A DNA stretch of 53,744 bases, filler included, from Sluysia triapertura (Eukaryota), in the NCBI GenBank assembly GCA_046118255.1. It is 4 parts of 4 records of this genome, joined end to end, with 100 filler letters (N's around TTAATTAATTAA, not from the genome) between each part and the next. Parts side by side here need not be neighbours in the genome. Positions count along the whole stretch, not along the records: positions 1 to 14,239 come from JBJNIA010002118.1; 3 more parts are not named here. One strand, written 5' to 3'. Each line of letters begins with the position of its first letter. The stretch's first letter is position 1. The notes beneath the pieces were generated by a model that saw only the letters and a list, made by a program, of their open reading frames with translations, ran no database searches and had not been told where the DNA came from. This document shows positions 1 through 50,870 of the stretch, in pieces. The position numbers and the translations under genes were made by a program.

Positions 1-43
<43 letters not shown>

Positions 44-60
44 TAATAATAATGATAATA
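1..60. repeat. (AAT)n microsatellite at window start
   Basis: Direct reading: ataataata... with occasional gat units. Confidence 0.95.
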
Positions 61-699
61 AGGATAAGATGAACTAAATAATAATAAAAGTAAATAATAA
101 TAATACTATGAAAAATAAAAAGATTTAGAAACGCATAAAATCTTTCTAATTTTAAACATATTTCTTTTAAAATTTTCTCATTATTTTCTTGGAATATAAA
201 ACAAATTGTATAAAATTATTTATTGTAATTTTTATTTCTTAAATTACATGTTCTTATTAAAATGAAGAATGAAAAGTCTGTTGGATGAAATGAAGAGAAT
301 TGTTCTAAATGAAACAATTGCATTAATTCTTGCAGAATTCTTCTCAGCCTATTTCTTTGTGTGGCTTCGACAAATCTTTCTTATAATTTGTAGTTCTTCA
401 AAAGCCTTAAATAATTTAGAAATCTTTTAGACTATGAATAATGTTGAAATATTAAAGCTTGAGGTTGTTGAATGAAGAATGTATATCATCATAAAATTAT
501 AAAGAATGAAATTAAAAAAAGAAATTATTAAAATTGGAGATGTTGACAGAAATTTCATTTAGAATATTATTATATTTTGACATAAGTTTAAAATGTAAGT
601 TTGATGATTTTGGATGTTATGAATGATTTGTGAAGGAATAAAAAGAGGAATATTAAAGAAATGTGATTTTTTATTATGATGGATTAAATTGAAATTTTA

Positions 700-1800
700 A
701 AGTAATTTGGTTAGCCACCACAGCGACAATAACGATTACGATTGATTTAGCAGCGAACCACAAATTATGAATTACCAAAATAATAATCACCACAAATTAC
801 GAAATACCACGTCACTAGTCAATTTTAGTTGTGAGTCGTATTTTATGTATGAACATTGTGTGTCATCTAATTAATTTTATGATTATTGATTTATACATTT
901 GTGTACTTTGTCAATTTAACATTCATCATTTAAGTTTGTACAAATCATTGACTTTTATAATATTCGTAATTTACTGATTTATAATTTTGTTTTTATTTTG
1001 TAATTTATAATTTTTGTTTTTTAACCCGATTAATTTTTAGATTATTATTATTTAATTCTTTTGGATTATTATAAACTAACGTAAGAATTTATATTAATTA
1101 TAAAATTTAATATCTTTAAAAAACTTTGTTTTAATAAATTAAATAAAACATTTGCTTAAATCTAGCCAAGGCCAGTTAAATCAACTATATATAGTTGAAA
1201 GTTTCAATAAACATCACACAATTTTTAAGCACAATTTTTTAAAAATTTGAACCAGATTTTGTTAATTTTTTAACGAAGTGGTCAAAGAAATTCTAATCTG
1301 AATTCCTGCTAAATTTGCTTACTAAATTTTGGTCTAATAATACGTTAGTTTATTATATTAAGTTACGGATATACAACATATATCCCGGTAAAATCAACTA
1401 AAAATCACTTTTTTAATTATTTCTAAAAAGATTTTATAATATATCTTTCGTAAAATCATCATTAAAATATTATCAATTTAGGAATTAAATTGATTAATAT
1501 CTCGTAATTTATTTATTTTATTACATTTATAACCTGTTTAATTTACCTGTTTAATCTACAAATTCAACGGCTAGCCCTAACTGGTAAGCCTAATACGTTG
1601 GTGGACTCACGTTAAAATCCTACTTTATTCTAAGAATCATCACAGAGAATAAACTAGTTTAATTAAAAAATACATTAAGTAGTTAAATTTTAGTTAATTT
1701 CATGTCAAAGAATTTGAGTGTGATTTTCAATAATTAATCATCCCTAATTCGTTTAATTAGAATTGAATGATTTTGAAAACAATTAAAAATCCTACGAGGA
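700..1800 (-). other. Structured non-coding element, long copy A (unnamed family)
   Basis: Reverse complement of 1563-1612 (ACGTGAGTCCACCAACGTATTAGGCTTACCAGTTAGGGCTAGCCGTTGA) matches 49704-49753 and 47898-47928. Perfect inverted pair at 1071-1083/1341-1353. ATTTAACTGGCCTTGGC motif (about 1165-1181, minus) shared with about 48687-48703. Confidence 0.75.
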
Positions 1801-2509
1801 CGTCGCATTAAGCATACAACTTTAATCGAGATTTAATTTGTTAGTGGTTGAGTTAAGAAAAGCCACTAGCAATAATAAATGGCAAAAAATTATGATAAAT
1901 TAGAAAAGGGAGACATAAATATTATAGATATGATGCATGAAATTACGTAAGACAATGGTATTACAATAACCTCAGCTATGAAATATAAGATTATAGGTGA
2001 TCAAAGAATTGCGATAGTTACTAAAGAAGAAATAGTGATAGATGAATATATTAATGAATATATTAAGGTGACGATATAAAGAAAAAGAAGGAAAACTAAG
2101 AAACAAGAAGGAAATATTAATCCAAATAAGATTAAGAAAATAATAATGACAGAATCAAAGATTGAATAAATAATAAACCAAAAAAAGAAATAAAACAAGA
2201 AATGGACTAGAATACTAGCGATCAAATAAATTCAAATATTAGTGAAAAAATGGATTCAAAAATGAAATGTGAAGATATCACAATGTGAGATATAACAGTA
2301 CGAGAATTTTTTGAAATCTATTAACACTTAGTGCTACATATGATTATACTTATATGAGTTGATTATGATTATGATTATATGAGTTGAATGCCAGATCAAC
2401 TCATAGAAATCACAAACAATCATCAACACAAATCAACACTTCTTATATAAACAAATTACTCAACACATGCAAGACGTAAACACAGTCGTAATAATTTATA
2501 ATTATTAAA

Positions 2510-4008
2510 ATTTTGTAGACTATTCTCGTTGCATTGTTTGGTTTGTTCTTTTTCTTGCACGTATGTTTGTCTTTATGCATATATTTTTATTGTTCCTCGC
2601 ACTTTATCCTATTCTTCTTATTTCTGCTACTTCTACTTCTACATATTTCATTGTATTGTTCCAAATTGTTTAAGATAAATCATTCATTTAACACTTCTTA
2701 AACAAAGAACATTAGTAAAAATTATGATTTTACCAAAGAACATTCTAATCATATCGAAATTCTATTTATAGCGTCAATAATATAGCTATTAAAATAACCA
2801 AAATCGGTTTAATATATGGTCTTTTATTGTATCACTTATGTTCGGCATAATCAGTCAAGAATAGAAGAAATGCTTACTAACTTGTTTAGCTTTATGGATA
2901 ACTTCATATTTTTTGTCAATATTTTGTAATCCGAAATAATAAGTATAACTAATCTTAATGTCATTATTATTTGCTAAGATAACATATCAAACAGTTAAAA
3001 TCATGATATTATTATCAACTTTTTTAAGTACAACATCACCTAGTGCCAATACTATAGTTATTAAGATAATCAAATCACTAGTTTTTATATTAATGAAAAA
3101 TACATTTTACTATGAAGATAATGACTTTATATCTTGTTATAAGTGTTATATAAGTTTTTAACCAATGTTTATTATCTTAATTATTTTTGAATTATTATTC
3201 CTGAACTACTTTGTTGGATCAATAAAATTATACACATTTATAATTTGGAATTTTTTCTTCTTAGTTTTATGTAGAAATCCAAATTTTATACATAGTTTAA
3301 CAAATAAGATTCATCATGGTTATTCATTTAATGTAGAATTTTCAAATATTTACAAATTGTTAGTATTTAATTTATATTTCCGTGATTATGAAACTAATCA
3401 TGTAAATCCGAATTCTCAAATATTGTTAAACTATCATTCAGCTAAGATTAATACCACTAAATTGTACAATAATTGTATTATTATTGTTAAAAATATTATT
3501 AATTACATAAAAATATCTTTAACATTAAATGCGTCTTTTGATAAAGAAAATTCAATACTATTTGTGATTACATTAATTAGACATACGAAAGAAAAAGGAA
3601 TAAGCGATTACAACTTTTTTGTACCTTATTAAAATATTATTAGATAAGTATATCGCTTGTAATACATGCAGTAATTATTGTACAGATAAGATTTATTTTC
3701 AAACTAATTTAATGGCGAAATACCAATAATCAAATTGAAGTCGTTGGCATTTGTTACTGATTTGGCATATTCAAGTATGTTTGTATGTATAAGTTTATTG
3801 GATTTCATGTACGATTTATTCACTTCATATCTAAATTTTATGTTATTTAAAGTTTTAGTGATAATACTGATAACAGTACCAGTAATTCTGCTGATTATAT
3901 CCTTTGCCACTTCAGAATGGCCGAGTTTTTTATGTACAACAATTATCTCATACTCAATCAACTCTTATGTCATCTTTTGATGAGTTAAACAATTGAATTT
4001 GTAAACAT
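2510..4008 (-). pseudogene. Disrupted intronless ORF of unknown (possibly viral or mobile) origin
   Basis: Protein-like segments on the minus strand (ORF 3704-3961 and further pieces such as FQIINVYNFIDPTK and DHILTDFGYFNSY) broken by stops. Long antisense 'shadow' ORFs on + (2958-3632, 3735-3980). TGACGTCA (4077-4084) and CCAAT (about 4092) lie just upstream. Confidence 0.35.
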
Positions 4009-5129
4009 ATTAACGTATTTGAAATATTTTTTATTCGAACCAGTGAAATTTACAATTTGACATCAAAGATAATTGCTGACGTCACAGACGACCAATTATT
4101 TAGAATATATGTTTTATAAAGGTATTTTATTCACAATTTCACGTTATTTTATTGTTTAATATAAATTTCTTTGTTATAAGCTTAATCGTATTATTTGAAT
4201 TAATTTTTACAATTTTTGTTAAATATTAAGCCTAAATTAAACGTTTTCAAAGTAATTTTTAAGTTAATTTACGAAATAATAAATGTTAACAATGTCAATA
4301 AAATAGTTCATAAGATAGATAAAATTAATGAATTTTATAAAACCCTCGACAATATTAATGTTGGGTTCATCTACAGTAAATGTCTTAGAAAATTTTTCTC
4401 TTAAAAACCGCTATTTAAAATTTACTTAGTATGACTGAGGATATAATATAGCGAAGTTTGGAAACTTACAACCTTTGTTAAATCTTAGATTTTATAAATG
4501 ATTAGGTGTATAATTTCATTCTCTTCTGTAATCCCAAACGTGTATCATATTATTTCTACAACTCGCATGAATTCTTTGTATTATAGTTTTTCAATGTTGA
4601 TCGATATTAACTTTTAATTTTGTTTGATTAACATGAAGACAATGGATGCTAAAAATTCTTTAAATACATTTATTGGAGATTCATATAAATTAATCGTTAA
4701 ATTAATCTAGCATAAATAATTTTATTGTAACATTAAATTATATTAATACCAAAACTCCTTACTAAAGAACATTTAAAATATAATAAATAACCACCTGAAG
4801 TTAACAGAATAATTATTTTAAAAATATTAAAGAAACTTAATATCTAAATATAATTTTGTTACAGTGATTTATGTACATGTTTAAAGTTCAATAAAAATAT
4901 TATGTAAGATTTTATGTCTTCTTTTAAACAAGATGAAAACTCTAAGAAATTAAACTTGCGGTCCTTTTTACAAAATAAATTGCGTGGAATATTCTCATGT
5001 ATATCTAGTAAAGTTGTCATGTGTTCAACACAGTTTTGTGATACCACAAAATTGTATTAAATATCACAGCTGCTACCCAGGTGACCAAAATTATCTCCAA
5101 TAGATTGTGTTGCCAAATTATTTGCAGGA

Positions 5130-5910
5130 TATGAACAACTAATTACATGGGATGAATTATTTCACTAATTTATCACTAATTATCTTAAATTAATTATCAC
5201 AAATTTTCTCAGTTCATCATCAAGATAGTGCATCTATGATTTCGAATTTGCGTGGTAATTACAGTACCTTGTAACATTAAATCCTTTAAAACATCTTGGT
5301 TTCTTGCTATCTCCAATATTTTTAATTGATCCACTAACATTTGAACATAAAGCTATGGCTATTCTAACTTTAGATTGTTTTATGTGTTTTCTTTCACTTG
5401 ATGAAATCGTTCTTGTAGTTAATGCTTGAAAAAAATGTCCAGTTTTATCCATATTGAGTATGACTTCTGGGTCAATTTCTGCCAATTTTTCAAATATTTT
5501 TTTCTATTGGCTGAAACATCAGCATCATTCATTGAATTTACTTCTCCTGAACTTTCAATTTCAGAATAAATCGATTTTTGAATCTATAGAGCCATCCTGT
5601 GCTGAACTGCAGGTCATCAACATTTAGTTTTTATCCAAATTCCTTTGCTTTTGTAACGATAATTTCATCAGTCACGTAACTATTTATCGCATCCATTCGA
5701 TCAATGAATTCTCGAAGATGGTCTGGAGTAAGTGTTTGAGCTTTCACAATCTTCCCATTTCTCTTTATTTTTCAAAAATTTCTGATAACGTAGAAATTCC
5801 TAGGTCGAGGTTTAATTCTTTTCTGATAATTTGAAACATTTTCTTCGACTCCTTTATTGCAAATATTTTGCCTTTTGATGAATTGTAATTTATGTTCTTT
5901 TTCTAGCCAT
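5130..5910 (-). pseudogene. Tigger/pogo-family (CENP-B HTH + DDE_1) transposase pseudogene
   Basis: MARKRT*ITIHQK start, TDEIIVTKAKEF, LQFSTGWLYRFKNR (CENP-B-type HTH), ILNMDKTGHFFQALTTRT and KQSKVRIAIALCSNVSGS...IGDSKKPRCFKG (pogo/Tigger motifs); stops and frameshifts present. Confidence 0.9.
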
Positions 5911-6578
5911 ATGAATATTTAATTTAAATAAATTAAAATTGTAAACATCTTAATATTTAAACAACTTTTAAAAATTATTAGAAATTTAATGCAAAAACAG
6001 CTTTCCGATTGTGGATCATGAAATTTCGGATTATTGAATCAAATTTGTCTTTTTACTAAGTATTAGAATTTAACATTATGTTTTTAATATATTTGAAAAG
6101 ATTGTACCCTTCTGTTATTATATTTATTAACAGAATTCATTAAGTATTTTTCGTCTATTTTAAATTATACATATGTAAGATGCTACCATGGTACGATTTA
6201 ACTATTATTTTTCGATATTTATATATGTGAATTGCAGTTTTAAGTTTCTAATATAATATAAATTCGTGTTAAAGTTAATATGTCATATTTTATTTTAAAT
6301 CAGTGTCTCATATTAATATATTAGTTTTCTTCACAAAATAACTGTATAACTATTTTTATAACCATTTGTAAAATAACTATATAAATTATTATATTTATAA
6401 CTTGAAAATTTTATTTCTCTAAAAATTCATCTCAAACTTAAATTTTTAAATTAAATGCTATTAATGTTTTTTTTCAAATTTATGTAATTGGTTCTAACAA
6501 TTTTCAAATGAAATCAAGTAAATGAGAATGTAAATATAAATAAGGATTTGCATAAATCTAATTATTTTTTTGTTAAAA

Positions 6579-7042
6579 ATGAGTTTACAACGTGGTATAA
6601 GACAACTTGATAGTTTGGATATTGAACGAAACATAGAACAAGAATTTTTAACAATGGAGAATCGTTCATCTAACTGTACTAAACATTGTTTATTGGAATA
6701 TTTACGACAAGATGATTTACGAAGTTTAGAGAAATATTTCACAATGTTAGGCATAAATATCTTTGAAGATAATGTTCGTTTGGAAATATTTTTGGATCAA
6801 ATTGTAATCGATGAAACAGACGATAATGAGCTAACAGAAATAGAGAAAAAACAATCATTATTATATCAAAATAAATTTTTTATGAAAATTTTAAAATATT
6901 TCTGGAACAATTTAAATCAACCGTTAAATATAGCTGTTGCTTTTGGATCCATAAAAATTTTAGAGTTTTTATTACCGAAAGTGACAAATGTGAAACATAC
7001 TAAAGATATGATGACAGCTTTGATACTTGGAAGCTTTCTTGG
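6579..7042 (+). CDS. Probable first or early exon of an ankyrin-repeat protein (TRPA-type channel N-terminus is one possibility)
   Basis: Uninterrupted frame from ATG 6579. The C-terminal part PLNIAVAFGSIKILEFLLPKVTNVKHTKDMMTALILGSFLG fits the ankyrin consensus (PLHxAxxxGxxxIxxxLL...TALxxAxxxG). Followed by a candidate GT donor (GG|GTTTGT at 7043) and a T-rich stretch. Downstream exons were not located. Confidence 0.6.
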
Positions 7043-7213
7043 GTTTGTTTTTTTACAAAGTTAATTTTATATTGTGCAGAGTATCTCAGAACTAACATAA
7101 TTTTAATTTATCATTAGACAACCAAAAATTCTATGAAATTATGTATATATATATATATATATGAATACATAATGCAGAAATACTTACTACTTGTTTTAAG
7201 GGGATACAATATC

Positions 7214-8261
7214 CTAACATCGTTCATATAGTGATTTATTAAGTATTATTAAATTAATTTGAATATTGTAAATAGGATTTAGATGATTAATGTAAGAAAT
7301 AAAATTATTATAAAATATTAATTTAATTATTAAAGAGTAGTTAAATATCAATCTAATTATTCTAAATGAAATTGTAACTTTATTAATATTTCTATGTTCA
7401 ATTTTAAAGATAAAATGATTGAAATAAAGTATAAGACATGCGTTATAAACTAAATTTATGGATTTGATAAAAAATTGTTTCATAAAAATAAATTTACGTA
7501 ATAATAACTGTTGATGTATCTGTGAACATATTACGACCGAAATTCTAGGAATATAAATAAAAATAAATGAACACAACAAAAAGTAAAATTCATCAAAATG
7601 CAAGAGTAAATATAAAAAATAATAATATACCTTCAAATGTATCTTCTTATCAAATAGGTTAAATAAGACAGTGAGATATGGACAGATATTTGCACTAAAC
7701 AGATGTGAATGACCGATATATGCAGAAGTTGCGGTTCAAAGAGGTTCTCTGAATAAGCTTGTTGTAATTGCATACGTAGATTCATCGGGAAGAAGTAATG
7801 ACAAGAGTTTATCTGATGTAACGTCACTATTTGATATTAGAAAATCTGACAGTTATAAAAGCATATACTAATTTTGATTTATTAATCATAGTCGAAAATT
7901 CTTTTAGAAATATTATAACGCTAATAATACTATTATATTCTTGTTCATTTACGTTATATCTATAATTCTTTGTTCGAGGTAATTGATATTCACTTAGAAG
8001 CCTTTTATCTACGATATCATTTATTCCATTAGATATTCGAAAAATATTATATAAATCTTTTCTTAATTCAATCAAAAGAGGTAAAGTGTTCTTTAATTCC
8101 TAAGAAATGATTTTACACATACTACTAACTAATTCATTAACTGGACTTAACACATTCATCGTTCTTTTACATCGATTAAGTACATTATCTTGAGCTAAAA
8201 TGATCTTTTGAATGCATTCGTTACCAACGTATTGTTCTATCTGATTAATAAGGTCTGTCAT
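7214..8261 (-). pseudogene. Disrupted intronless ORF of unknown family, antisense to the putative ankyrin-gene intron
   Basis: ATG at 8261 (MTDLINQIEQYVGNECIQKIILAQDNVLNRCKRT...) is in frame with ORF 7827-8075 across one TAG. Frameshifted continuation DVTSDKLLSLLLPDESTYAITTSLFREPL* runs into ORF 7214-7636. Confidence 0.4.
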
Positions 8262-8599
8262 TAATTTTATTAAAATATTTAGTTTTAAATTCGCTTAATA
8301 GAAATAAAGTCGGTTAACATTATAATTAAACAAAAATTACGTAAATGTATACGATGTGATGGAATTGTAGGATCAATCACCGTAAAATTATTAATTGTGA
8401 TTGTAAGTATAAAAATTTTTTAAAATAATGTTTTTCGAAAATTTAGCTGTACGAAGTTGTGTGACCACTTTATCACATTTGCCAGTGGTCAGCCAATAAA
8501 AGCAACTTCTTGTTGTTGGACCACTTTAATTAAACCAGGCTGGCAAATTACTAGGAAATAAATTGAAGACTGTCGAAATTGACAGTTAATGTGATTATA

Positions 8600-9080
8600 T
8601 ACTTATAATGAAGATAATGATAATGATAATGAACAATGCAAATAAATAATAATAATAAATTAAAAATGGACTAATAAAAGTAATAATAAAAATAAAAATA
8701 ATAAAATAAAATAAAATAATGATATAAAATAATAACAATAACACATAATTTTCTTCTAATTCTTTAAATATTTCTTTTCTTTAAATACTTCTTTTCTTTA
8801 CAAATCTATGAAAATATTACATATTTCTTTAAAATTGTTATAAATGTTTATTGAAGAAAATATTGTAAGTTATAAGGAATATGAAAAAGAAACATAATAG
8901 AAAAAGTTAATGAAGCTGAAAGTGTTACAAGAAATTCCATTTAGTTTACTGTTTTAAACTAAATTTAAAATGCAAATTTAATGATTTTTGATGTAAAGAA
9001 TAGTTGAAGTGTTGCAAAAATGTGATTTTTAGTGTAATGTGATGGATTAAAATTTTGATTGATAAAGTTGGCGACCACAC
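8600..9080 (-). repeat. Diverged dispersed repeat homologous to about 60-720
   Basis: Blocks shared in the same order: ttaaaatg(c/t)aa(a/g)ttt(a/g)atgatttt, aatgtgattttt, gatggattaaa, and ttggcgaccac vs ttagccaccac; both sit next to AAT-rich tails. Confidence 0.6.
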
Positions 9081-9489
9081 TTGTGCATATTGTTTTACAC
9101 ATGAAAATTTTCATAAACAAATTTTTATTTAAACCGTATAATTAAAAGCATTACGTCCAAAACTACACAAAAGTTCTGCAAGCAGGAAAGGTGACTATTT
9201 GAATGGATGCTTCCAAGCATTTTTCTGTTTGTCAATTTTTCTTTGTTGACACAGAAAATTTTCTTACTAGAAGAAATTAAAAATTTCTTGTAACAATTTT
9301 CATACAAGATAGCACTTTAGAATAAATTTTTGTTGGTATGAAACAGTTTAATAAAGACAACAATAATAATAATAGTAATAGTAATAATAATGGTAGGTTT
9401 TATATGCGGAACAGTGTAAAAATAAAATTGTCTTCCAAAAGACTTGCCACTCGGCTTATCAATAAGTTAAAATGAGTAAGCTTGAAAAA

Positions 9490-9900
9490 ATACAAAAGAG
9501 TTCGCCTAAGATGCTAGACTTACAAGAAATGGCTTGTCCGTAGGATTTTTAAAGAATTTAATTTAAAGGAAGTAGTGAAGGTCAAGTAACTTTTAATGCT
9601 ATCGTTTACTATAGATAAAAATTCATAAGGTGCCATCTAATTTTTCACGAGATCAAAGTGGATTCTATTGAACACTAATTTATAATTCTTTTTTGAATTC
9701 AAATTGCGCTTTTAAGCGAGGTTAAATTACACCTATATAATGGATTTAATGTCTTCTTTAACGCGAGATTAGTTATAATATGGATTTTGCTAATCGGTTT
9801 TACTAACAGAGAATTATAAATAACACTTGATTTTAAATGAAATTAAAACTATGTAACTTAGGTGAAACTTACAAATGATCCCATATTAAAAGGATCATGT
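9490..9900 (+). other. Structured non-coding element, divergent core copy E
   Basis: GAGTTCGCCTAAGATGCTAGACTTACAAGAAATGGCTTGTCCGTAGGATTTT (9498-9549) aligns with the minus-strand core at 44042-44092; downstream hairpin GATCC-catattaaaa-GGATC (about 9877-9896). Confidence 0.55.
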
Positions 9901-10049
9901 AAAAATTAGAATTTAAATTTTCTCCAAAAAATAATTTACAATATTTTCAAGAAATGCTATTTTTAAATGATGAAAAGTTTTAAATGAACATTTTCTTCAG
10001 AATAATTTTCTTTCAACATAAGCAGTAAATTAGTAGATTTTGAATTATT

Positions 10050-10270
10050 ATTATTTTTACCTAAATACGACTTACATTTTTCCAAAATCACTTATTGAAA
10101 ACATCGCAATAAAATTTAACTCCGTTACACATGAATTTAGGCAATTCTGAAACAGCGTGATTGTATTTCAAGTTAGTGTTTACATACGCATTTTTGTTTA
10201 GGTTTTATTTGTGCAAAGCCTGGATGCCTTAAAAACGCATATATAGGGATGAAACACAAGCCATTTAAAT
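10050..10270 (+). mobile_element. Penelope-like retroelement remnant (RT thumb and GIY-YIG endonuclease fragments)
   Basis: Translations TYIFPKSLIENIAIKF and FICAKPGCLKNAYIGM resemble the Penelope N-x-(Y/F)P..LI region and the VYxFxC...C...YIGxT motif; fragments are short. Confidence 0.45.
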
Positions 10271-12259
10271 TCATTTTATTTTGCAGCATTTATATATATA
10301 AGAATTATTAGCTCGAATTTATAGTGCTTTAACTGTGTAAATTTTCTGACAGTTTTATTTTCAAAGAAACTTCATATAAGGATGATAAATTACAGAAGTA
10401 CTACTAAAATTATTTAAACTAAAATGCTGAAAATTTAATTAATAAAAATACATTTCAAATAATGGAAAATAACTTAATAATTATTTAAATTGTGAAAAAC
10501 AATGAATTAAATAATATCTATATTATAATATCCTAATTTGTCAAACGTTTTGTTTTCATTATCGACTAAAACATGCTGTAATAAAAACTTATTTTTATAA
10601 TAAATGTGTCATAAATCATATTAAGATAGTGATACGATAAATTATATATAATTATCAAACGAAAGAGCTATATTGGATTTGTTTCCATTAAAATCTCATT
10701 AATTTCGTTTGTTTTATTAATATTAAACGGAAAATAATTATTCGTTTATTTAATCACAGTAATAATAATCATTATAATTATTAATATAATAATAATGTAA
10801 TAAATTTGTTTTATTTTAATTAAATTAGGACAATAAAACACTACAAACTATTTTTAAACCTGTTTATTAATAATAAATAGTGCTTTATAAACTTTAAAAA
10901 AGTAAAACCGTTACAAAATGTTAAAATAATAAAGAACTAATGTAAGGTCGAAAGATTTTGTAACTCGTTTCAGTTATTAGAGATGGAAGTGATTTAAATG
11001 TTTTTACTTTCTTTCAAGATCTCAGTTTACAACTTTAGTTTCAGAAATCAAAGAAAATTTAGTTCCAAATTTCGTGGTAGCAATAAAATTGAAATTATTT
11101 ATATTTATAATGCCATACCACTTATTTTAAGAAAAGTATTTTGAGTTTATTATTAGATATTTCATATTTTATAATGATCAATAAAATGTGTCGAAATCAA
11201 TAATTTTTCCAAAATCTGAATGGAAATATATTTGTTACATAACGTTTTCTTCCGACTGATTAAGTGTGGTATGTTCCACTCTTAATTTTTATTATTTATT
11301 TAGTCTATTTTAAAAATTATTTATTTGCTGTAGTATTTCTGAAGTATTTTTCTTAAATAATTCATAATATTCGGGTGATTTAATTTGAAACATAAATGAT
11401 GCACCCATCTTATTATTATTATCATTCATATTACCCCCAAGAAGTAACGTTAGCACTATAATTTTGAATACTACTCTTTTTTTATAGATAACCATTGTAA
11501 TCATTTATAATAAGGAGTTATATAAGATATACTTTTATTTGAAAATCTATTCTTCCTGATTGATTCAAAACTAATTGTTATTTATCAACCAATGCAGAAT
11601 TAGTTTTAAAGAATCTTTATTGTCAAATTTTGTAATCTTTGTTCTTACATATGTCAAACACTATCTCCATTTGTTACAGCGTCATTAGCTTTATTTTTAA
11701 TGCAAACATCATTTTGACTTAACCATTTCGAGACGGTATTCAAGTATCGCGGTTGTAGATGGTATAAACCAGACCAGATTAGGTTTGTTCTGAAAACATT
11801 TGAATGAACTTTTATTAGTATCAAATGAAGTTTTATAATTTATATATTAAATAGAAATTAATAAAGATATTTTTGCTACAAAAACCTCAATCTCTTCATA
11901 TTAAACCAGAACTTATTGCCTAACAGGTATGCAATCGATAATTTCTGCAAAAAGTGAAAGTTTAGAATATAAAGAAGACAAAAATACCAGATAACAATAT
12001 TACAACAAAAACTTTAATTATGTAAGTCCAAATTTCGAGTCAAATTATATATCAATCGATAGATCTTGATTACTAAATAAAACTTTTTCTTACAAAACGA
12101 ATGGTCTAGAATGAATAGATCATTTCAACTAATTACGAAAATTTTTTGAAAGATTAGAAAACAGTTTTAATTTGTGCATTTGTCCCTAGACGAAATTTTT
12201 CTTATATTTAAGTCTGCAGGCAACCCGTTCTCTCGGTTTTCCTTTTAAAAAATGCTATA

Positions 12260-12800
12260 ATGAAAATATATAATGATCAATATCGCGTTTTCGTAGTTTT
12301 AACTTATCAGGGAACAAAACAGTGGAATTTTCAGGTAAACATGGAGTTCTTCAACTGTTAAAAGGTAGGTAAATTTAAGTAATTTAATTTAGAACCTATG
12401 ACAAGTTTTGTGAAATGAGAAGTGTCCTACATTATACTGAGAGAATGAAATCAGCAGAAAAGACTGTCACAACTGAAGAAAACATGAGGAAAGTCAGTAA
12501 ATTCGTCCGTCTGAATCCATCCACTTTGACAAGAAAGTTTTCACAGTAACTATGACTTTTGAGATCATCGCTTCAACGAATTATGTCTTTGGATTTATTG
12601 CTTTTTCTCTGCAGCAACGTTTGGAATGTGCCAACAGAATGATATCGGTGAAGGCGAACGAAGAAATTGATTTTACAAAGATCTTGTTTAGCGACAAGAC
12701 ACACTTCCAACTAGAAGGTTCCAAAAACCTTCAATTATATGTAATCAAATAAAGGAAAATTGCACTCTCCAACAATGATGACAAGATGTACTGCTGTGGA
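12260..12800 (+). pseudogene. Tc1/mariner-superfamily (DUF4817-type HTH) transposase remnant
   Basis: MKIYNDQYRVFVVLTYQ; KTVTTEENMRKVSKFVRLNPSTLTRKFSQ*L; QRLECANRM...FTKILFSDKTHFQLEG (degenerate ILFSDEAHFxLxG catalytic motif). Confidence 0.8.
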
Positions 12801-14239
12801 AGATTCAAATGTAGCTTATGGACACTATTTTCATAATAATGAGAATAATGATGATTTAAATGACTATTTTTATTAATTTATGTATTTATTTGTTTTTTTA
12901 TTGCCGAGTAGATAGTTTACTGGTTTACTTGCGTTTGCTTAATTTGAGTTCCTATATATCGTTCTGGGGAGGTTGAGTGATTTATTGGTTAATTAACTGG
13001 AAAATGAATATTTAGTGTTTTGATTTCTATGATGTTTATTGTTGTGCATTTATGAAGCTTATTATATTTGCACATATATGGAACTTAGAGTATTTGCAAT
13101 GGTTTTACTTTAAGCAGTCAAAGTCGATTTTAATTGTGAGTTAATCAGAAGTGAGTCACAAAATATTTTGATCTGCTGTCACTTAATCAACAACTAACTC
13201 TATTTATATAATTTATTCAAGGATGTGATTTTTAATACTACATGTTACGTGCCCATGATTGTTCCTTGGTGACGATGGCTGTGTTTGCGAAGATTCTACG
13301 CTTATCGCAGTTTACATAATCTAATGTATACTAATTCTTGCAGCGATGATGATTACAGTGTTTAAGAATTGTACAGCAGTTTGAAGAAATCTCTATCTCC
13401 TTAAATGTCATTCGTCTGGATCACACAAACTTATTTATACAAGATAAAATGGGCATCAATCGAATATTATCCATCTCCGAAAAATACCAACCTAATCTTC
13501 TAATGATATTCTTGATAACCGTTATTAAATATTACTAAATAATAACAGAAAATTATCAGCATCATGAAAGATGTGATTGAATTTTTAGAATAATAGACTA
13601 TTACTAATACATAATCGCAAATCTTAATAAAAATGTATAATAATAATACAAATTTTCTAAAATTAAAAAAAAATAACAAAGAAATACACTTATTAAAATT
13701 CGTCATCAAAATCATCTTAATCATAATCATAATCATCTTATTATTATTATTCCTCAATAAATTTAAGTTTGATAATTATTATTATAAAAAAATGACAGAA
13801 TTATAGGTATATTATATAATATATTTTATATATGGAAAATTTTGCGATTGGTTAGAATCCAAAATAAGAAATTTTTCATCAAATTTTAATTAATCAATGT
13901 ATACCAACTATTTTAAATATTTTCGTGTTTTTGTAAAAATTTGTGCTGTGTCAATAAATAATGCACTGTGGCGCTTTTTTTCACACTCATCAATTTACAA
14001 AAAACTCATCCAAAAATATACCTTGTACCTCATCATCTCATTGCATGTAAAACACACCGTATACAATTTTACTCTTGCATTGAATGTAAATTATAAATAT
14101 TACAAATTATTATTACTTAGATTATAAAAATCAATTTTTTATTGAATGTAATTCCCAGGCATCGTGTTCAGTTTCCTACGAACAATTATAAAAATTTTTA
14201 TACTTTAAAATGGGTCCGCCTACGATAAACGTTTTATCT

Positions 14240-43829: not shown

Positions 43830-44095
43830 TTTTTTGAAGGAATACAGTTTTTAGTAAGGTCGAAAAATCCTACGTAAACTATTCCTACTGAATTTGATTT
43901 AGTAAGGATACCGTTTTTAATTGAACGGTAGTAAAATCTTATGTAAACTACAAAATATTGTAGTTAGTTACTATCAAGACAAGTTTAAGATTTTACCCCA
44001 TTATTTTAAAAAATAAAACTCCACTATTATTCTTGCTGATACCTATGAACTAGCCATTAAGTGTATAAGTCTAGGATCGTAGAGACTCACGTATT
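43830..44095 (-). other. Structured non-coding element, copy B-minus
   Basis: Reverse complement of 44042-44092 is ACGTGAGTCTCTACGATCCTAGACTTATACACTTAATGGCTAGTTCATAGG, followed by GATTTTAC + hairpin TACCGTT/AACGGTA and TAGTTTACGTAGGATTTTTC modules. Confidence 0.6.
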
Positions 44096-44189: not shown

Positions 44190-44320
44190 CACGAGAATAA
44201 AAAATATAAGTGTGTGAGTTCATCAACATATCTAGTCTTACCACTTAGGGCTAGTCGTTGGATTTAAAAGCAAGATAAAACTTTAATGCTTATGGAGGTT
44301 CAATGTCCTACATAAACTAA
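44190..44320 (+). other. Structured non-coding element, copy B-plus (core only)
   Basis: GAGAATAAAA...GTGAGTTCATCAACATATCTAGTCTTACCACTTAGGGCTAGTCGTTGGA (44214-44262). Confidence 0.7.
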
Positions 44321-47844: not shown

Positions 47845-49120
47845 GTGATTTTAAAAGTAAATAAGATCCTTAGAGAATAAAATAAGATTTTTAAGTGCTA
47901 GGCTTACCGGTTAGGGCTAGCCGTTGGATTTATAGAGAAAATGTTTTTTAATTGAAGACGGGAATATCTTCCTAAAGTGTCTGCGAATTTATTGAGATAC
48001 TCAGTGAGTCTATTTAAATATTTTACTTTCTGTCAAATAACAATTAAATACTTAAATGCTTATCAATCAAATTTAGCTGAGTTCTGGAAGTATTTTAATA
48101 GAATTTATAATCAAATGGGGAGTTAATGCAAATATTTTACTAACTGAAAAATATTGGTTAAATTTTACATTATTAAAATAGTTTACGTAAATCCTGTGAA
48201 AAGGATTTGTAATGAATGATTTTACCGTATCAGAATTAAATTCTGATAAGTGAAAACTTTGCTTTAGTAGAGATTTTATATTTAAAACTATGAAAATTAA
48301 TTATTAATAAAAAGGAACTATCAAATAGTTTATATTATATACTTAGTATGATAAAAAAGAAATATAAAAATTGATAAATATATTGCGGAGAGTTAATCTT
48401 ATAAAAATAATAATTTAATAATTGATTTTATGGGAAATTATTATAAGTTTCGAAATTAATTACAAAAATTTTATTGTAAGTCGATTTTACGGGGAATCTT
48501 ATCGTATCCTAAACTTAATATAATAAACTAACGTAATATTCTGTGTAAAAGAAAAATCTGGTTGTAATATCTTCTTAATCTTACTCTTGTACGCACTTCT
48601 TCCGAATGAAATATTTATAAAAACTGGTTAACGTAGTATAAAATTGTGTGAAAAATTGTAAGTTTTATGCGTATTTATGTACTTAATTTAACTGGCCTTG
48701 GCCAAATTAAAACAAAACTATTTATTTAATTGTTAAAACAAAAATATTTCGATTAATAATTTTAAATTTGATTAATTTCAAAAAATATTAAAGTTTACAT
48801 TTAATTAATAAAATTACTTACTTTAGTTTAATTTAGATCCAAAATTAATAAAAGAATAATAATACAATTAATTTAAAAATCCAAAAATAATTCAGAAAAA
48901 TAAGCAATAAAAGAAATTAATCAATCAAAGTTCAATTAAAAATCAATCAATAATACAGAATGTAATAATTATAATAAACAAATGATAGTTCATGATTGTA
49001 TAAAATGAAATAACTCCTAAACAACAAATCATGTATTTATCAAAATTTCACATGATTTTAATAAATAAACGTTTTGCTCTACCGCTGGTCTACAATGATC
49101 GTGTTAATGCGTGGCCAGCA
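47845..49120 (+). other. Structured non-coding element, long copy C
   Basis: Core at 47898-47928; hairpins AAATCCT-GTGAAA-AGGATTT and ATCAGAAT-TAA-ATTCTGAT; long-range pair 48524-48536/48818-48830; collinear with copy D about 1.8 kb downstream. Confidence 0.75.
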
Positions 49121-49644: not shown

Positions 49645-50870
49645 TAACATTCGTGGGGATTTTAAAAGTAAGACTTATCCTTATAGAATAAAATATAATT
49701 TTAACGTGAGTCCACCAATATACTAGGCTTACCAGTTAGGGCTAGCTGTTGGAATTTTGCAATTAAAGAGATTAACAATATAACTCAATGCTTGCTTAAA
49801 TGCTTAGTGAATTTCAGTTAAATTGTGGAGGTATTTTAAAGAATTCAAGTATTTATTAAAAATAATTATTTAAGGAATAGTTTTCGTAAATCCTATGAAA
49901 AGGATTTGTAATTAATGATTTTTCGTCATCAGAATTAAATTCTAATAAAGCTTTTGATGGACGGGCGATTTTATCATTTTGAAACTATGTAAATTATTTA
50001 TTATACAAATAACAAGACTTTTTTTCCTCGAATGTATATTAATAAAAATTATACAAGAATTCAATAATTATAATTAAGAAATAAAATTGTTGTTTAAATT
50101 AAGTACCAGAGTTAATATTTTGTTTTACAATGGATTTTAATTTGATTCTTCGTAGGAACCGTTAAAAGGTTCCGTATATCTTTAAAATAGATTTTTAGTA
50201 GATTTTACATTGGATACTTATAAGTATCAAATCCTACAAAAATAAACTAACGTGTTATAAATTATTCTATTGTTAAATAAAAAGAAAGTTCAATCAGTGG
50301 GATGATCTTTCAGAAGAAATGTCTCGAAAATATAATTCTATTATGATATCAAGTGGAGAGAAGTTTTCCTTATATATTCAAAATCAACGAAGCGCGGTTG
50401 TAATTTTTTGAAATTTTATTCTGTATCGTGAAATTTTTTCACGCGTATTTATGTATATTTTGTAGTGGCCATGAAAAAATTTAAAACAAAACTATTTAAA
50501 ATGAAATAATTTTGAAAAATAAAATAATTTAGAACTATTTAAATGATTTTTCTAAATTAATAAGCACTTACGTTAGTTTAATTCTTTAAAAAGAATTATT
50601 TTCCACAAATATTATTAAAATATAGTAATTTGTTCAAACATCGAAAAAATTAACTATTGTTATAAATAAATATGATAATGATGTATATAAATCGATAATC
50701 AGTTAAAACTAAAACGTGTATTACAATGTCCAATAACATAAATACAAATATACAGATTAATATACAGATTACATCATCACAAATATATGAAATTTTATCG
50801 CATTAGATTTTATTCTGATGTGCTTTATCAATATTTTAAAAGTGATTTTATCACCGACTTAAGCCACCCC
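49645..50870 (+). other. Structured non-coding element, long copy D
   Basis: Core at 49704-49753; hairpins AAATCCT-ATGAAA-AGGATTT, GGAACC/GGTTCC and GATACTT/AAGTATC; long-range pair 50243-50254/50569-50580. Confidence 0.75.

What the first reader, a model, noticed from the sequence alone, without database searches (positions are those of the whole stretch)
1563..1612. Conserved nested hairpin core with compensatory base changes across six copies
Seen at 1563-1612(-), 9498-9549(+), 44042-44092(-), 44214-44262(+), 47898-47928(+, 5' part missing) and 49704-49753(+). The inner stem (C/T)TAG(G/T/A)CTTA ... TAGGGCTAG or TGGCT(A/T)G closes a variable loop (CCAGT/CCGGT/CCACT/TACACT). The outer stem is CAACG/CGTTG in A, CCAATA/TGTTGG in D (G-C to A-U and C-G to U.G) and CCTA/TAGG or CTA/TAG in E and B-minus (A-U to U-A). 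G.U-tolerant changes on this strand point to RNA in the GTGAG-first orientation (inference). Two subfamilies are apparent (CCAAC/GTTGG and CCTA/TAGG types).
Basis: partly seen in the sequence, partly recalled or inferred. Interest (0 to 1): 0.8.

Follow-up and report, generated by a model that had tools for sequence, protein, structure and literature searches.

The report
Retrotransposon LTR hairpin beside tRNA-primer boxes
The conserved hairpin is real, but it is a working part of the long terminal repeat of a very abundant Ty3/gypsy-like retrotransposon: it sits among three short sequences that match the host tRNA used to prime reverse transcription, so it is a known kind of element and not a new RNA gene or ribozyme.

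Summary
Window 1565-1600 forms a nested hairpin. The genome (619 Mb, AT-rich, eukaryote-like) has at least about 6,000 copies of it, and compensatory changes at three or more base pairs separate the subfamilies.

The interpretation does not hold. The hairpin lies 45-80 nt from one end of a dispersed repeat of 0.3-1.3 kb that behaves as an LTR:
- Its termini are TG...CA.
- It is flanked by 4-bp target-site duplications.
- In six independent loci the hairpin-proximal end is followed, after 6-8 nt, by an 18-nt primer-binding site (PBS). This PBS is exactly complementary to the 3' end of a tRNA encoded six times in the same genome.
- In the two loci with enough downstream sequence, a gag-like ORF follows the PBS.

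- A second conserved motif, TCTGGAGGT, copies tRNA positions 39-47.
- On the genomic RNA both are complementary to the primer, like the HIV-1 primer activation signal and the Ty1/Ty3 multi-segment PBS.

The hairpin most likely organises the initiation complex for reverse transcription in R-U5. That role is inferred, not shown. Verdict: new member of a known kind, moderate-to-low interest.

The parts
846..1644 (+). LTR copy of 799 nt (sense strand is window +), running 5'-TGTATGAAC... to ...ATCATCACA-3'. It has an internal deletion of about 357 nt relative to full ~1.15-kb relatives, with the junction near 1549/1550. No matching 4-bp duplication flanks this copy.
   Evidence: BLAST against relatives. 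The far end was fixed by comparison with L019, where homology stops at ...TTCAT(T)ACA. TG...CA termini and 4-bp TSDs were shown for the family.
1565..1600 (+). Sense-strand reading: CAACG-G-CUAG-C-CCUA-[ACUGG]-UAAG-C-CUAA-UA-CGUUG.
   Evidence: Fold; covariation on 105 copies; both strands fold.
1602..1610 (+). Box A, TGGACTCAC. It is complementary to primer-tRNA positions 49-57 (GTGAGTTCG, the 5' half of the T-arm).
   Evidence: tRNA gene sequence. The motif is within one mismatch in 14 of 18 copies found without using it as an anchor.
1623..1631 (+).
   Evidence: Conserved in nearly all copies. The stem UUUAUUCUG/CAGAAUAAA is predicted in L041. It is visible in most PBS-bearing loci, with a both-sided change in L136.
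1645..1654 (+). GAGAATAAAC, a remnant of the 6-8 nt spacer that precedes the PBS in intact elements. In the window no PBS follows it.
   Evidence: Compare ...CA|GAATAAAC|TGGTGCCCAGAG in six loci. Window sequence.
9497..9548 (-). Decayed second copy of the box A and hairpin module. It is of the CCTA../..TAGG type, with a GGAAGT remnant of box B at 9568.
   Evidence: Sequence; comparison with the type e/f copies in A2; the fold is not better than shuffles; motif positions.

Best explanation
The feature is the conserved R-U5 segment of the LTR of a massively amplified LTR retrotransposon with a Ty3/gypsy-like gag. The window holds one internally deleted LTR (846-1644) and one decayed fragment (about 9497-9548).

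1. Box B (ACCUCCAGA), complementary to tRNA positions 39-47.
2. A variable stretch of 25-190 nt.
3. The nested hairpin.
4. One nucleotide, then box A (UGRACUCAC), complementary to the tRNA T-arm, positions 49-57.
5. About 12 nt, then UUUAUUCU.
6. The LTR terminus.
7. (C)AGAAUAAA, which pairs back to UUUAUUCU.
8. An 18-nt PBS complementary to tRNA positions 59-76.
9. gag.

Shown:
- The repeat has LTR properties.
- The PBS is an exact complement of a tRNA encoded in this genome.
- The two boxes are identical to internal tRNA segments.
- The hairpin is kept by compensatory changes.

Inferred:
- After the tRNA 3' end anneals to the PBS, its freed T-arm and variable-loop strands pair with boxes A and B, as a primer-activation mechanism.
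- The hairpin abutting box A, together with the U5-leader stem, holds these boxes in a geometry that lets reverse transcriptase start.
- Copies that lost this geometry stopped propagating. That would explain why this roughly 100-nt stretch is 94-96% identical among copies whose U3 parts have diverged beyond alignment.
For: LTR nature:
- In 9 of 17 family-a loci, CA followed by the same 4-mer that precedes the start occurs 1,080-1,300 nt downstream. The permutation mean is 2.8 and 0 of 2,000 permutations reach 9.

PBS:
- Six independent loci carry ...CA + 6-8 nt + TGGTGCCCAGAGTGAGGACCAG, 48-64 nt after box A.

Host tRNA:
- GTGAG-TTCGATC-CTCAC-TCTGGGC-A occurs in six gene copies, preceded by ATCTGGAGGTC. 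The sequence upstream of that differs between copies and is probably an intron.
- Its last 18 nt plus CCA are the exact complement of the PBS.

gag:
- An ORF follows the PBS in L041 and L077. The two are 55-66% identical at the amino-acid level.
- Its only library relatives (E 1e-5 to 9e-4) carry Retrotrans_gag, zf-CCHC and Ty3_capsid.

Boxes:
- Box A equals tRNA positions 49-57. Both variants, A or G opposite position 55, can pair.
- Box B: 49 of 100 copies have an exact match of 7 nt or more to tRNA positions 38-48 within 260 nt of the hairpin. Three controls give 0-3%.

Hairpin covariation.

Precedent:
- An 8-nt PAS complementary to the T-arm is conserved among retroviruses (PMC1865047).
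- Ty1 and Ty3 have PBSs of three segments that pair with the T and D arms of tRNAiMet (PMC4974528).
Against: - No experiment or transcript data bears on the proposed role.
- The role of the hairpin itself, as distinct from the boxes, rests only on its position and on analogy.
- In longer sense-strand folds the hairpin is not always in the minimum-energy structure, and the z-scores are unremarkable.
- pol, the polypurine tract (PPT) and paired LTRs around one internal region were not seen.
- The gag assignment is indirect: the ORF itself has no Pfam hit.
- Box B is absent or diverged in about 40% of copies.
- The covariation reflects only a few subfamily-level events.
Confidence: 0.62

Rival explanations
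1. This is the same LTR, but the hairpin acts on the reader's strand, that is, in minus-strand strong-stop DNA, which has exactly the reader's sequence. It would aid or regulate first-strand transfer, as the cTAR DNA hairpin does in HIV-1. This is a mechanism I recall from the literature, not one tested here.
For:
- One pair is U.G (G.T in DNA) in 66 of 105 copies on this strand and C.A on the other.
- R-U5 is the region copied into strong-stop DNA, given the PBS position.
Against: - Scattered G.U and A.C cells are equally common (57 against 46).
- In subfamilies c, d and e the sense strand is the more stable one.
- It is not known whether the hairpin lies in R, which strand transfer needs, or in U5.
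Confidence: 0.15
2. This is the same LTR, but the hairpin is a packaging, dimerisation or Gag/nucleocapsid-binding signal, or a signal for transcription or 3'-end processing, and is unrelated to tRNA priming.
For: - The loop and adjacent bases CTTAC (GUAAG on the sense strand) are conserved as sequence, not merely as pairs: C31 in 94 of 105, and C27/T29 in 96 or more of 105. That suggests sequence-specific recognition.
- About 28% of copies have the palindrome ACCGGT in the loop (column 33).
Against: - The hairpin abuts box A within 1 nt in all subfamilies.
- The commonest loop, ACCAGT, is not self-complementary.
- No data bear on Gag binding.
Confidence: 0.15
3. It is a free-standing structured non-coding RNA or ribozyme gene family transcribed GTGAG-first. 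Alternatively it is an snRNA/SL-RNA-like module made of a GTGAGT donor, a stem-loop and a U-rich Sm-like site.
For: - GTGAGT looks like a splice donor, and GGAUUU(U/G) follows the stem.
- Covariation supports a conserved structure.
Against: - There is no Rfam match at E up to 1.
- The module always sits at a fixed distance from an LTR terminus that has a TSD.
- GTGAGTTC is accounted for as tRNA positions 49-56.
- The supposed 'exon' upstream is the most variable part, which is the opposite of spliced leaders.
- The PBS and gag are on the other strand.
Confidence: 0.03
4. It is the 3' tail stem-loop of a LINE/SINE pair recognised by a non-LTR reverse transcriptase, or a subterminal hairpin of a cut-and-paste DNA transposon of the Ginger/MITE type.
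For: - The copies share one end while their length is variable.
- TGT...ACA termini with a 4-bp TSD also fit Ginger-type DNA transposons. That comparison is from memory.
Against: - The TSD has a fixed 4-bp length and the ends are defined.
- There is no A-rich or microsatellite tail.
- There is no terminal inverted repeat beyond about 6 nt.
- A tRNA-complementary PBS and gag follow the end.
- No adjacent RT or transposase ORF was found.
Confidence: 0.05

Closest known systems
HIV-1 primer activation signal (PAS) and U5-leader stem (PMC1865047)
   Same: - A short U5 motif upstream of the PBS is complementary to the 5' strand of the primer tRNA's T-arm (8 nt in HIV-1, 8-9 nt here).
- It lies among stems that flank the PBS.
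   Different: - The host, the tRNA and the sequences differ.
- Here a second box pairs with the anticodon-stem 3' strand and the variable loop. Together with the PBS, this leaves only positions 48 and 58 of tRNA 39-76 without a complement.
- PAS function is experimentally supported in HIV-1 and only inferred here.
Avian sarcoma/leukosis virus U5-IR stem-loop and U5-T-psi-C interaction
   Same: - A conserved U5 hairpin lies immediately beside a U5 sequence that pairs with the T-psi-C region of the primer tRNA.
- Both are needed for efficient initiation.
   Different: - That is a vertebrate retrovirus using tRNA-Trp.
- This resemblance is a lead from memory and was not tested.
Ty1 and Ty3 multi-segment primer-binding sites (PMC4974528)
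   Same: LTR retrotransposons whose RNA pairs with the primer tRNA at three separate segments, including the T arm.
   Different: - The Ty1 segments lie downstream, in GAG.
- The Ty3 segments are split between the two genome ends.
- Here the extra boxes lie upstream of the PBS in R-U5, in a retrovirus-like layout, with a covarying hairpin between them.

Membership tests
LTR retrotransposon (long terminal repeat) | Termini 5'-TG...CA-3' with short inverted ends | tested here: met
LTR retrotransposon (long terminal repeat) | Target-site duplication of fixed short length (4-6 bp) | tested here: met
   9 of 17 loci have a 4-bp duplication at 1,080-1,300 nt, against 2.8 expected; 0 of 2,000 permutations reach 9. 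The window copy itself has none.
LTR retrotransposon (long terminal repeat) | Primer-binding site complementary to the 3' end of a host tRNA just inside the 5' LTR | tested here: met
   An 18-nt exact complement of a tRNA present in six gene copies lies 6-8 nt after the LTR end in six loci.
LTR retrotransposon (long terminal repeat) | gag (and pol) ORFs downstream of the PBS on the same strand | tested here: inconclusive
   A gag-like ORF is present in L041 and L077. It has no direct Pfam hit. Its relatives carry Retrotrans_gag, zf-CCHC and Ty3_capsid. pol was not seen: the contigs end or the copies are degenerate.
LTR retrotransposon (long terminal repeat) | Two direct LTR copies flanking one internal region, with a polypurine tract before the 3' LTR | not tested
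Retroviral-type primer activation signal / extended tRNA-template pairing | A U5 motif complementary to the primer tRNA T-arm, specific to the tRNA named by the PBS | tested here: met
   UGRACUCAC matches tRNA GUGAGUUCG (positions 49-57). The T-stem GTGAG was predicted from the PBS and then confirmed in the tRNA genes.
Retroviral-type primer activation signal / extended tRNA-template pairing | Functional requirement for initiation of reverse transcription | not testable with these tools
   This needs primer-extension or retrotransposition assays.
Rfam RNA families (ribozymes, snRNAs, SL RNAs, riboswitches) | A covariance-model match | tested here: not met
   0 matches at E up to 1 over window 1-14239. 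No tRNA or tmRNA was found in the window.
SINE/LINE 3' tail | Variable-length TSD, an A-rich or microsatellite tail, and a partner LINE with RT sharing the tail | tested here: not met
   The TSD is a fixed 4 bp and there is no such tail. The ORFs next to the module lack RT.

The most novel reading that the evidence does not exclude
Boxes B and A plus the PBS together complement 36 of the 38 nucleotides of the primer tRNA's 3' half (positions 39-76), in three pieces arranged around a covarying hairpin. That would be the most extensive natural tRNA-capture architecture described for an LTR retrotransposon. With more than 6,000 LTR copies, transcripts of this region could also act as a sink for that tRNA or its 3' fragments, linking the element's copy number to host tRNA or tRF biology.
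Probability: 0.12. Interest if true: 0.55.

Novelty: new member of a known kind. Interest (0 to 1): 0.3.

Why it matters
For annotation, this removes an apparent new family of structured RNA or ribozyme. It also flags at least about 6,000 LTR copies, perhaps 1% or more of this genome. Many contigs end in or just after these copies, and they would otherwise seed false ncRNA predictions.

For retroelement biology, it is a clear natural example of the primer-activation idea outside retroviruses. The PBS, a T-arm box and a variable-loop box all match one identifiable host tRNA. Natural subfamilies also provide ready-made compensatory stem variants for testing whether U5 hairpins position the primer.

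Tried and rejected
- **Rfam and ARAGORN on the window:** nothing found.
- **Alternative genetic codes** to explain the lack of ORFs: uninformative.
- **Spliced-leader or snRNA reading** (GTGAGT donor plus Sm-like GGAUUU): rejected. The upstream "exon" is the variable part, and GTGAGTTC is explained by the tRNA T-arm.
- **Introner or mini-intron reading** (GTGAGT...AG): no support beyond motif resemblance.
- **LINE/SINE 3'-tail model:** pursued because an ORF reads towards the module in L021, L063 and L071. That ORF family (about 500 aa; distant members have ankyrin repeats) has no RT and no Pfam hit in the conserved C-terminal domain. It has no word-search relatives and no Atlas neighbours. 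Most of its copies lack the module. It is therefore not the mobilising enzyme.
- **Fanzor/TnpB omega-RNA idea:** no RuvC or zinc-ribbon hit.
- **TRIM or short-LTR-plus-TGGAGGT-as-PBS idea:** rejected, because there is no second terminal copy and TGGAGGT is tRNA-like rather than tRNA-complementary on that strand.
- **Empty-site search among fetched loci:** found none.
- **The look-up of encoding contigs** to identify the organism: nothing on record.
- **Full tRNA sequence:** two patterns demanding an intron-less tRNA found nothing. The tRNA genes appear to carry an intron, so the 5' half and the anticodon were not read and the tRNA's identity is unknown. A resemblance to tRNA-Ile(UAU) is only a recollection.
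- **My first control for box B** (the stretch read backwards) was invalid, because TGGAGGT reads the same backwards. It was replaced.
- **Rows left out of alignment A2:** L021 and L052 (displaced ATTT anchor), L086/L039 (an aberrant copy), and the spurious anchor matches in L008 (minus strand) and L052.

Full report
**1. The observation**

Window 1563-1612 on the minus strand reads GTGAGTCCACCAACGUAUUAGGCUUACCAGUUAGGGCUAGCCGUUG. A single copy is not remarkable against shuffles (z = -1.6).

The second copy in the piece (9498-9549, plus strand) is recognisably related but decayed, and it does not fold better than chance.

**2. Scale**

The window is contig C2118 of a 619-Mb assembly in 263,945 contigs. 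It is about 23% G+C, with few long ORFs and AAT microsatellites, so it looks like a eukaryotic genome.

- An 86-nt query around the core found 40 scored places at 93-96% identity out of 1,995 candidates.
- The loop-centred pattern TAGNCTTACNNGT has 3,926 matches against 877 for its control.
- A pattern that leaves the stems free, AATAAA-N8-18-GTGAGTYCA-N38-48-ATTT, has 2,733 + 4,023 matches against 0 + 12.

The core is therefore part of a dispersed repeat with at least about 6,000 copies.

**3. Covariation**

I aligned 105 distinct copies (A2). These were anchored only on GTGAGTYCA and ATTT, or found with the loop pattern. I then counted 14 pairs.

- 90.5% of cells pair, against 7-54% when partners are slid.
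- The covariation score is 0.187 against 0.121 for shuffles (0 of 500 reach it).
- Pair 15-52 is A-U in 90 copies and U-A in 11.
- Pair 22-46 is C-G in 70, U-A in 12 and U.G in 8.
- Pair 24-44 is A-U in 61 and G-C in 33.
- One copy (L087) has a differently spelt outer stem, CUGU/ACAG.

These are subfamily-level events, so the number of independent changes is small, roughly three to five. They all preserve pairing.

Scattered G.U cells (57) are not commoner than A.C cells (46). The hairpin folds on both strands, with means of -11.2 and -10.1 kcal/mol. The structure alone therefore does not name a strand.

**4. The repeat is an LTR**

Sequence beyond it is unrelated between copies.

Homology runs 0.6-1.3 kb the other way. 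By comparison with L019, it ends at ...TTCAT(T)ACA.

In 9 of 17 family-a loci, the 4-mer preceding TGTG recurs directly after a CA located 1,080-1,300 nt downstream. The permutation mean is 2.8, and 0 of 2,000 permutations reach 9. There is no excess at other distances. The features are therefore TG...CA ends and a 4-bp target duplication.

**5. PBS, tRNA and gag**

Then comes TGGTGCCCAGAGTGAGGACCAG.

I predicted that a tRNA ending ...CTCAC-TCTGGGC-A should exist. Six genes carry GTGAG-TTCGATC-CTCAC-TCTGGGC-A. The first 18 nt of the motif are the exact complement of this tRNA's last 15 nt plus CCA, which is a canonical PBS.

Downstream of the PBS, L041 and L077 carry homologous ORF fragments (55-66% amino-acid identity). 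These give no Pfam hit themselves. Their only relatives among 1.84 billion representatives (E 1e-5 to 9e-4) contain Retrotrans_gag, zf-CCHC and Ty3_capsid.

The hairpin lies in R-U5, 45-80 nt from the LTR's 3' end.

**6.

The tRNA genes read ...ATCTGGAGGTC-GTGAG-TTCGATC-CTCAC-TCTGGGC-A. The sequence upstream of ATCTGG differs between gene copies, so it is probably an intron.

The invariant GTGAGT(T/C)CA next to the hairpin is tRNA positions 49-57. On the genomic RNA, UG(A/G)ACUCAC can form 8 Watson-Crick pairs plus a U.G with the 5' strand and loop of the T-arm. Both natural variants pair with position 55.

I had already noted GGAGGT as conserved 25-190 nt beyond the hairpin. It is tRNA positions 39-47 (TCTGGAGGT). 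49 of 100 copies have an exact match of 7 nt or more there, against 0 of 100 on the reverse complement, 1 of 100 in shuffles and 1 of 38 in the next 260 nt.

Together with the PBS, positions 39-47, 49-57 and 59-76 of the tRNA all have complements in the element.

AGAATAAAG (CUUUAUUCU on the sense strand) pairs with the LTR end plus spacer, CAGAAUAAA, directly 5' of the PBS. This stem appears in the L041 fold. L136 carries a both-sided change, CUU/AAG.

**7. Mechanism**

The layout matches retroviral initiation signals: a PAS complementary to the T-arm, masked and exposed by U5 stems (PMC1865047). It also matches the three-segment PBSs of Ty1 and Ty3 that pair with the T and D arms (PMC4974528).

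I propose that the hairpin and the U5-leader stem scaffold boxes A and B so that the tRNA, once annealed to the PBS, is opened and activated. This step is inferred.

Alternatives within the LTR frame remain open.

**8. The window copies**

Copy A is an LTR at 846-1644, with the plus strand as sense.
- It carries a deletion of about 357 nt that removed box B.
- It has no matching TSD.
- It is followed by GAGAATAAAC, the leader spacer, but by no PBS and no gag.
- It is therefore a remnant of a 5' LTR.

Copy B is an old fragment.

**9. Limits**

As a result no full-length element, pol, PPT or 5' half of the tRNA was read.
- The organism is not identified.

Noticed in passing
L061-L077 (e.g. L062:2-1330, L064:1294-2736, L075:3416-5023, L074:4707-6920): A multi-copy ORF family with at least 149 genomic matches and open frames of 400-800 aa. 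It has a conserved C-terminal domain of about 210 aa with no Pfam, word-search or Atlas relatives. Distant members carry N-terminal ankyrin repeats. DNA homology between copies stops sharply at the stop codon (...CCCCATAA).
   Followed up: partly
L061 (=L021), L071/L076, L063/L077: In 3 of the 12 closest copies of that ORF family, an LTR of the hairpin family follows the stop codon in the same orientation. In two of them the junction falls exactly at box B (CCCCATAA|CCTCCAG). This might mark the 5' end of the element's RNA (a template-switch chimera) or a targeted insertion. It is unexplained.
   Followed up: partly
L043:732-1157 (minus strand): A second, unrelated high-copy ORF family: 2,185 first-look candidates, 150 scored at E < 1e-26, open frames up to about 600 aa, and no Pfam hit. 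It lies about 570 nt from an LTR module. A short acidic ORF end (...EDEFVDYSDTIDLTF*) lies about 75 nt before the hairpin.
   Followed up: partly
G000 contigs C62135, C62467, C63639, C87077, C196190, C215247: Six genes for the primer tRNA. The sequence immediately upstream of ATCTGGAGGTC differs in each copy, which suggests an intron after the anticodon loop. The anticodon was not read.
   Followed up: partly
(e.g. C1397, C1651, C2027, C3275, C4128): Many contigs of about 2.0 kb end within or just after the LTR module. The assembly appears to break at this repeat.
   Followed up: no
window 1-110, 8600-8720, 9349-9395, 10757-10800: AAT/AATAAT-type microsatellites and A-rich low-complexity runs, typical of this AT-rich genome.
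   Followed up: no
window 6570-7064 (+): A 164-aa ORF with weak, sub-threshold ankyrin-repeat hits (E 0.016-0.1). It may be a fragment of the ankyrin gene family.
   Followed up: no
L017 (C54205): Two direct copies of the module 230 nt apart, plus an inverted partial copy about 1.2 kb away. These are nested or tandem LTR fragments.
   Followed up: no
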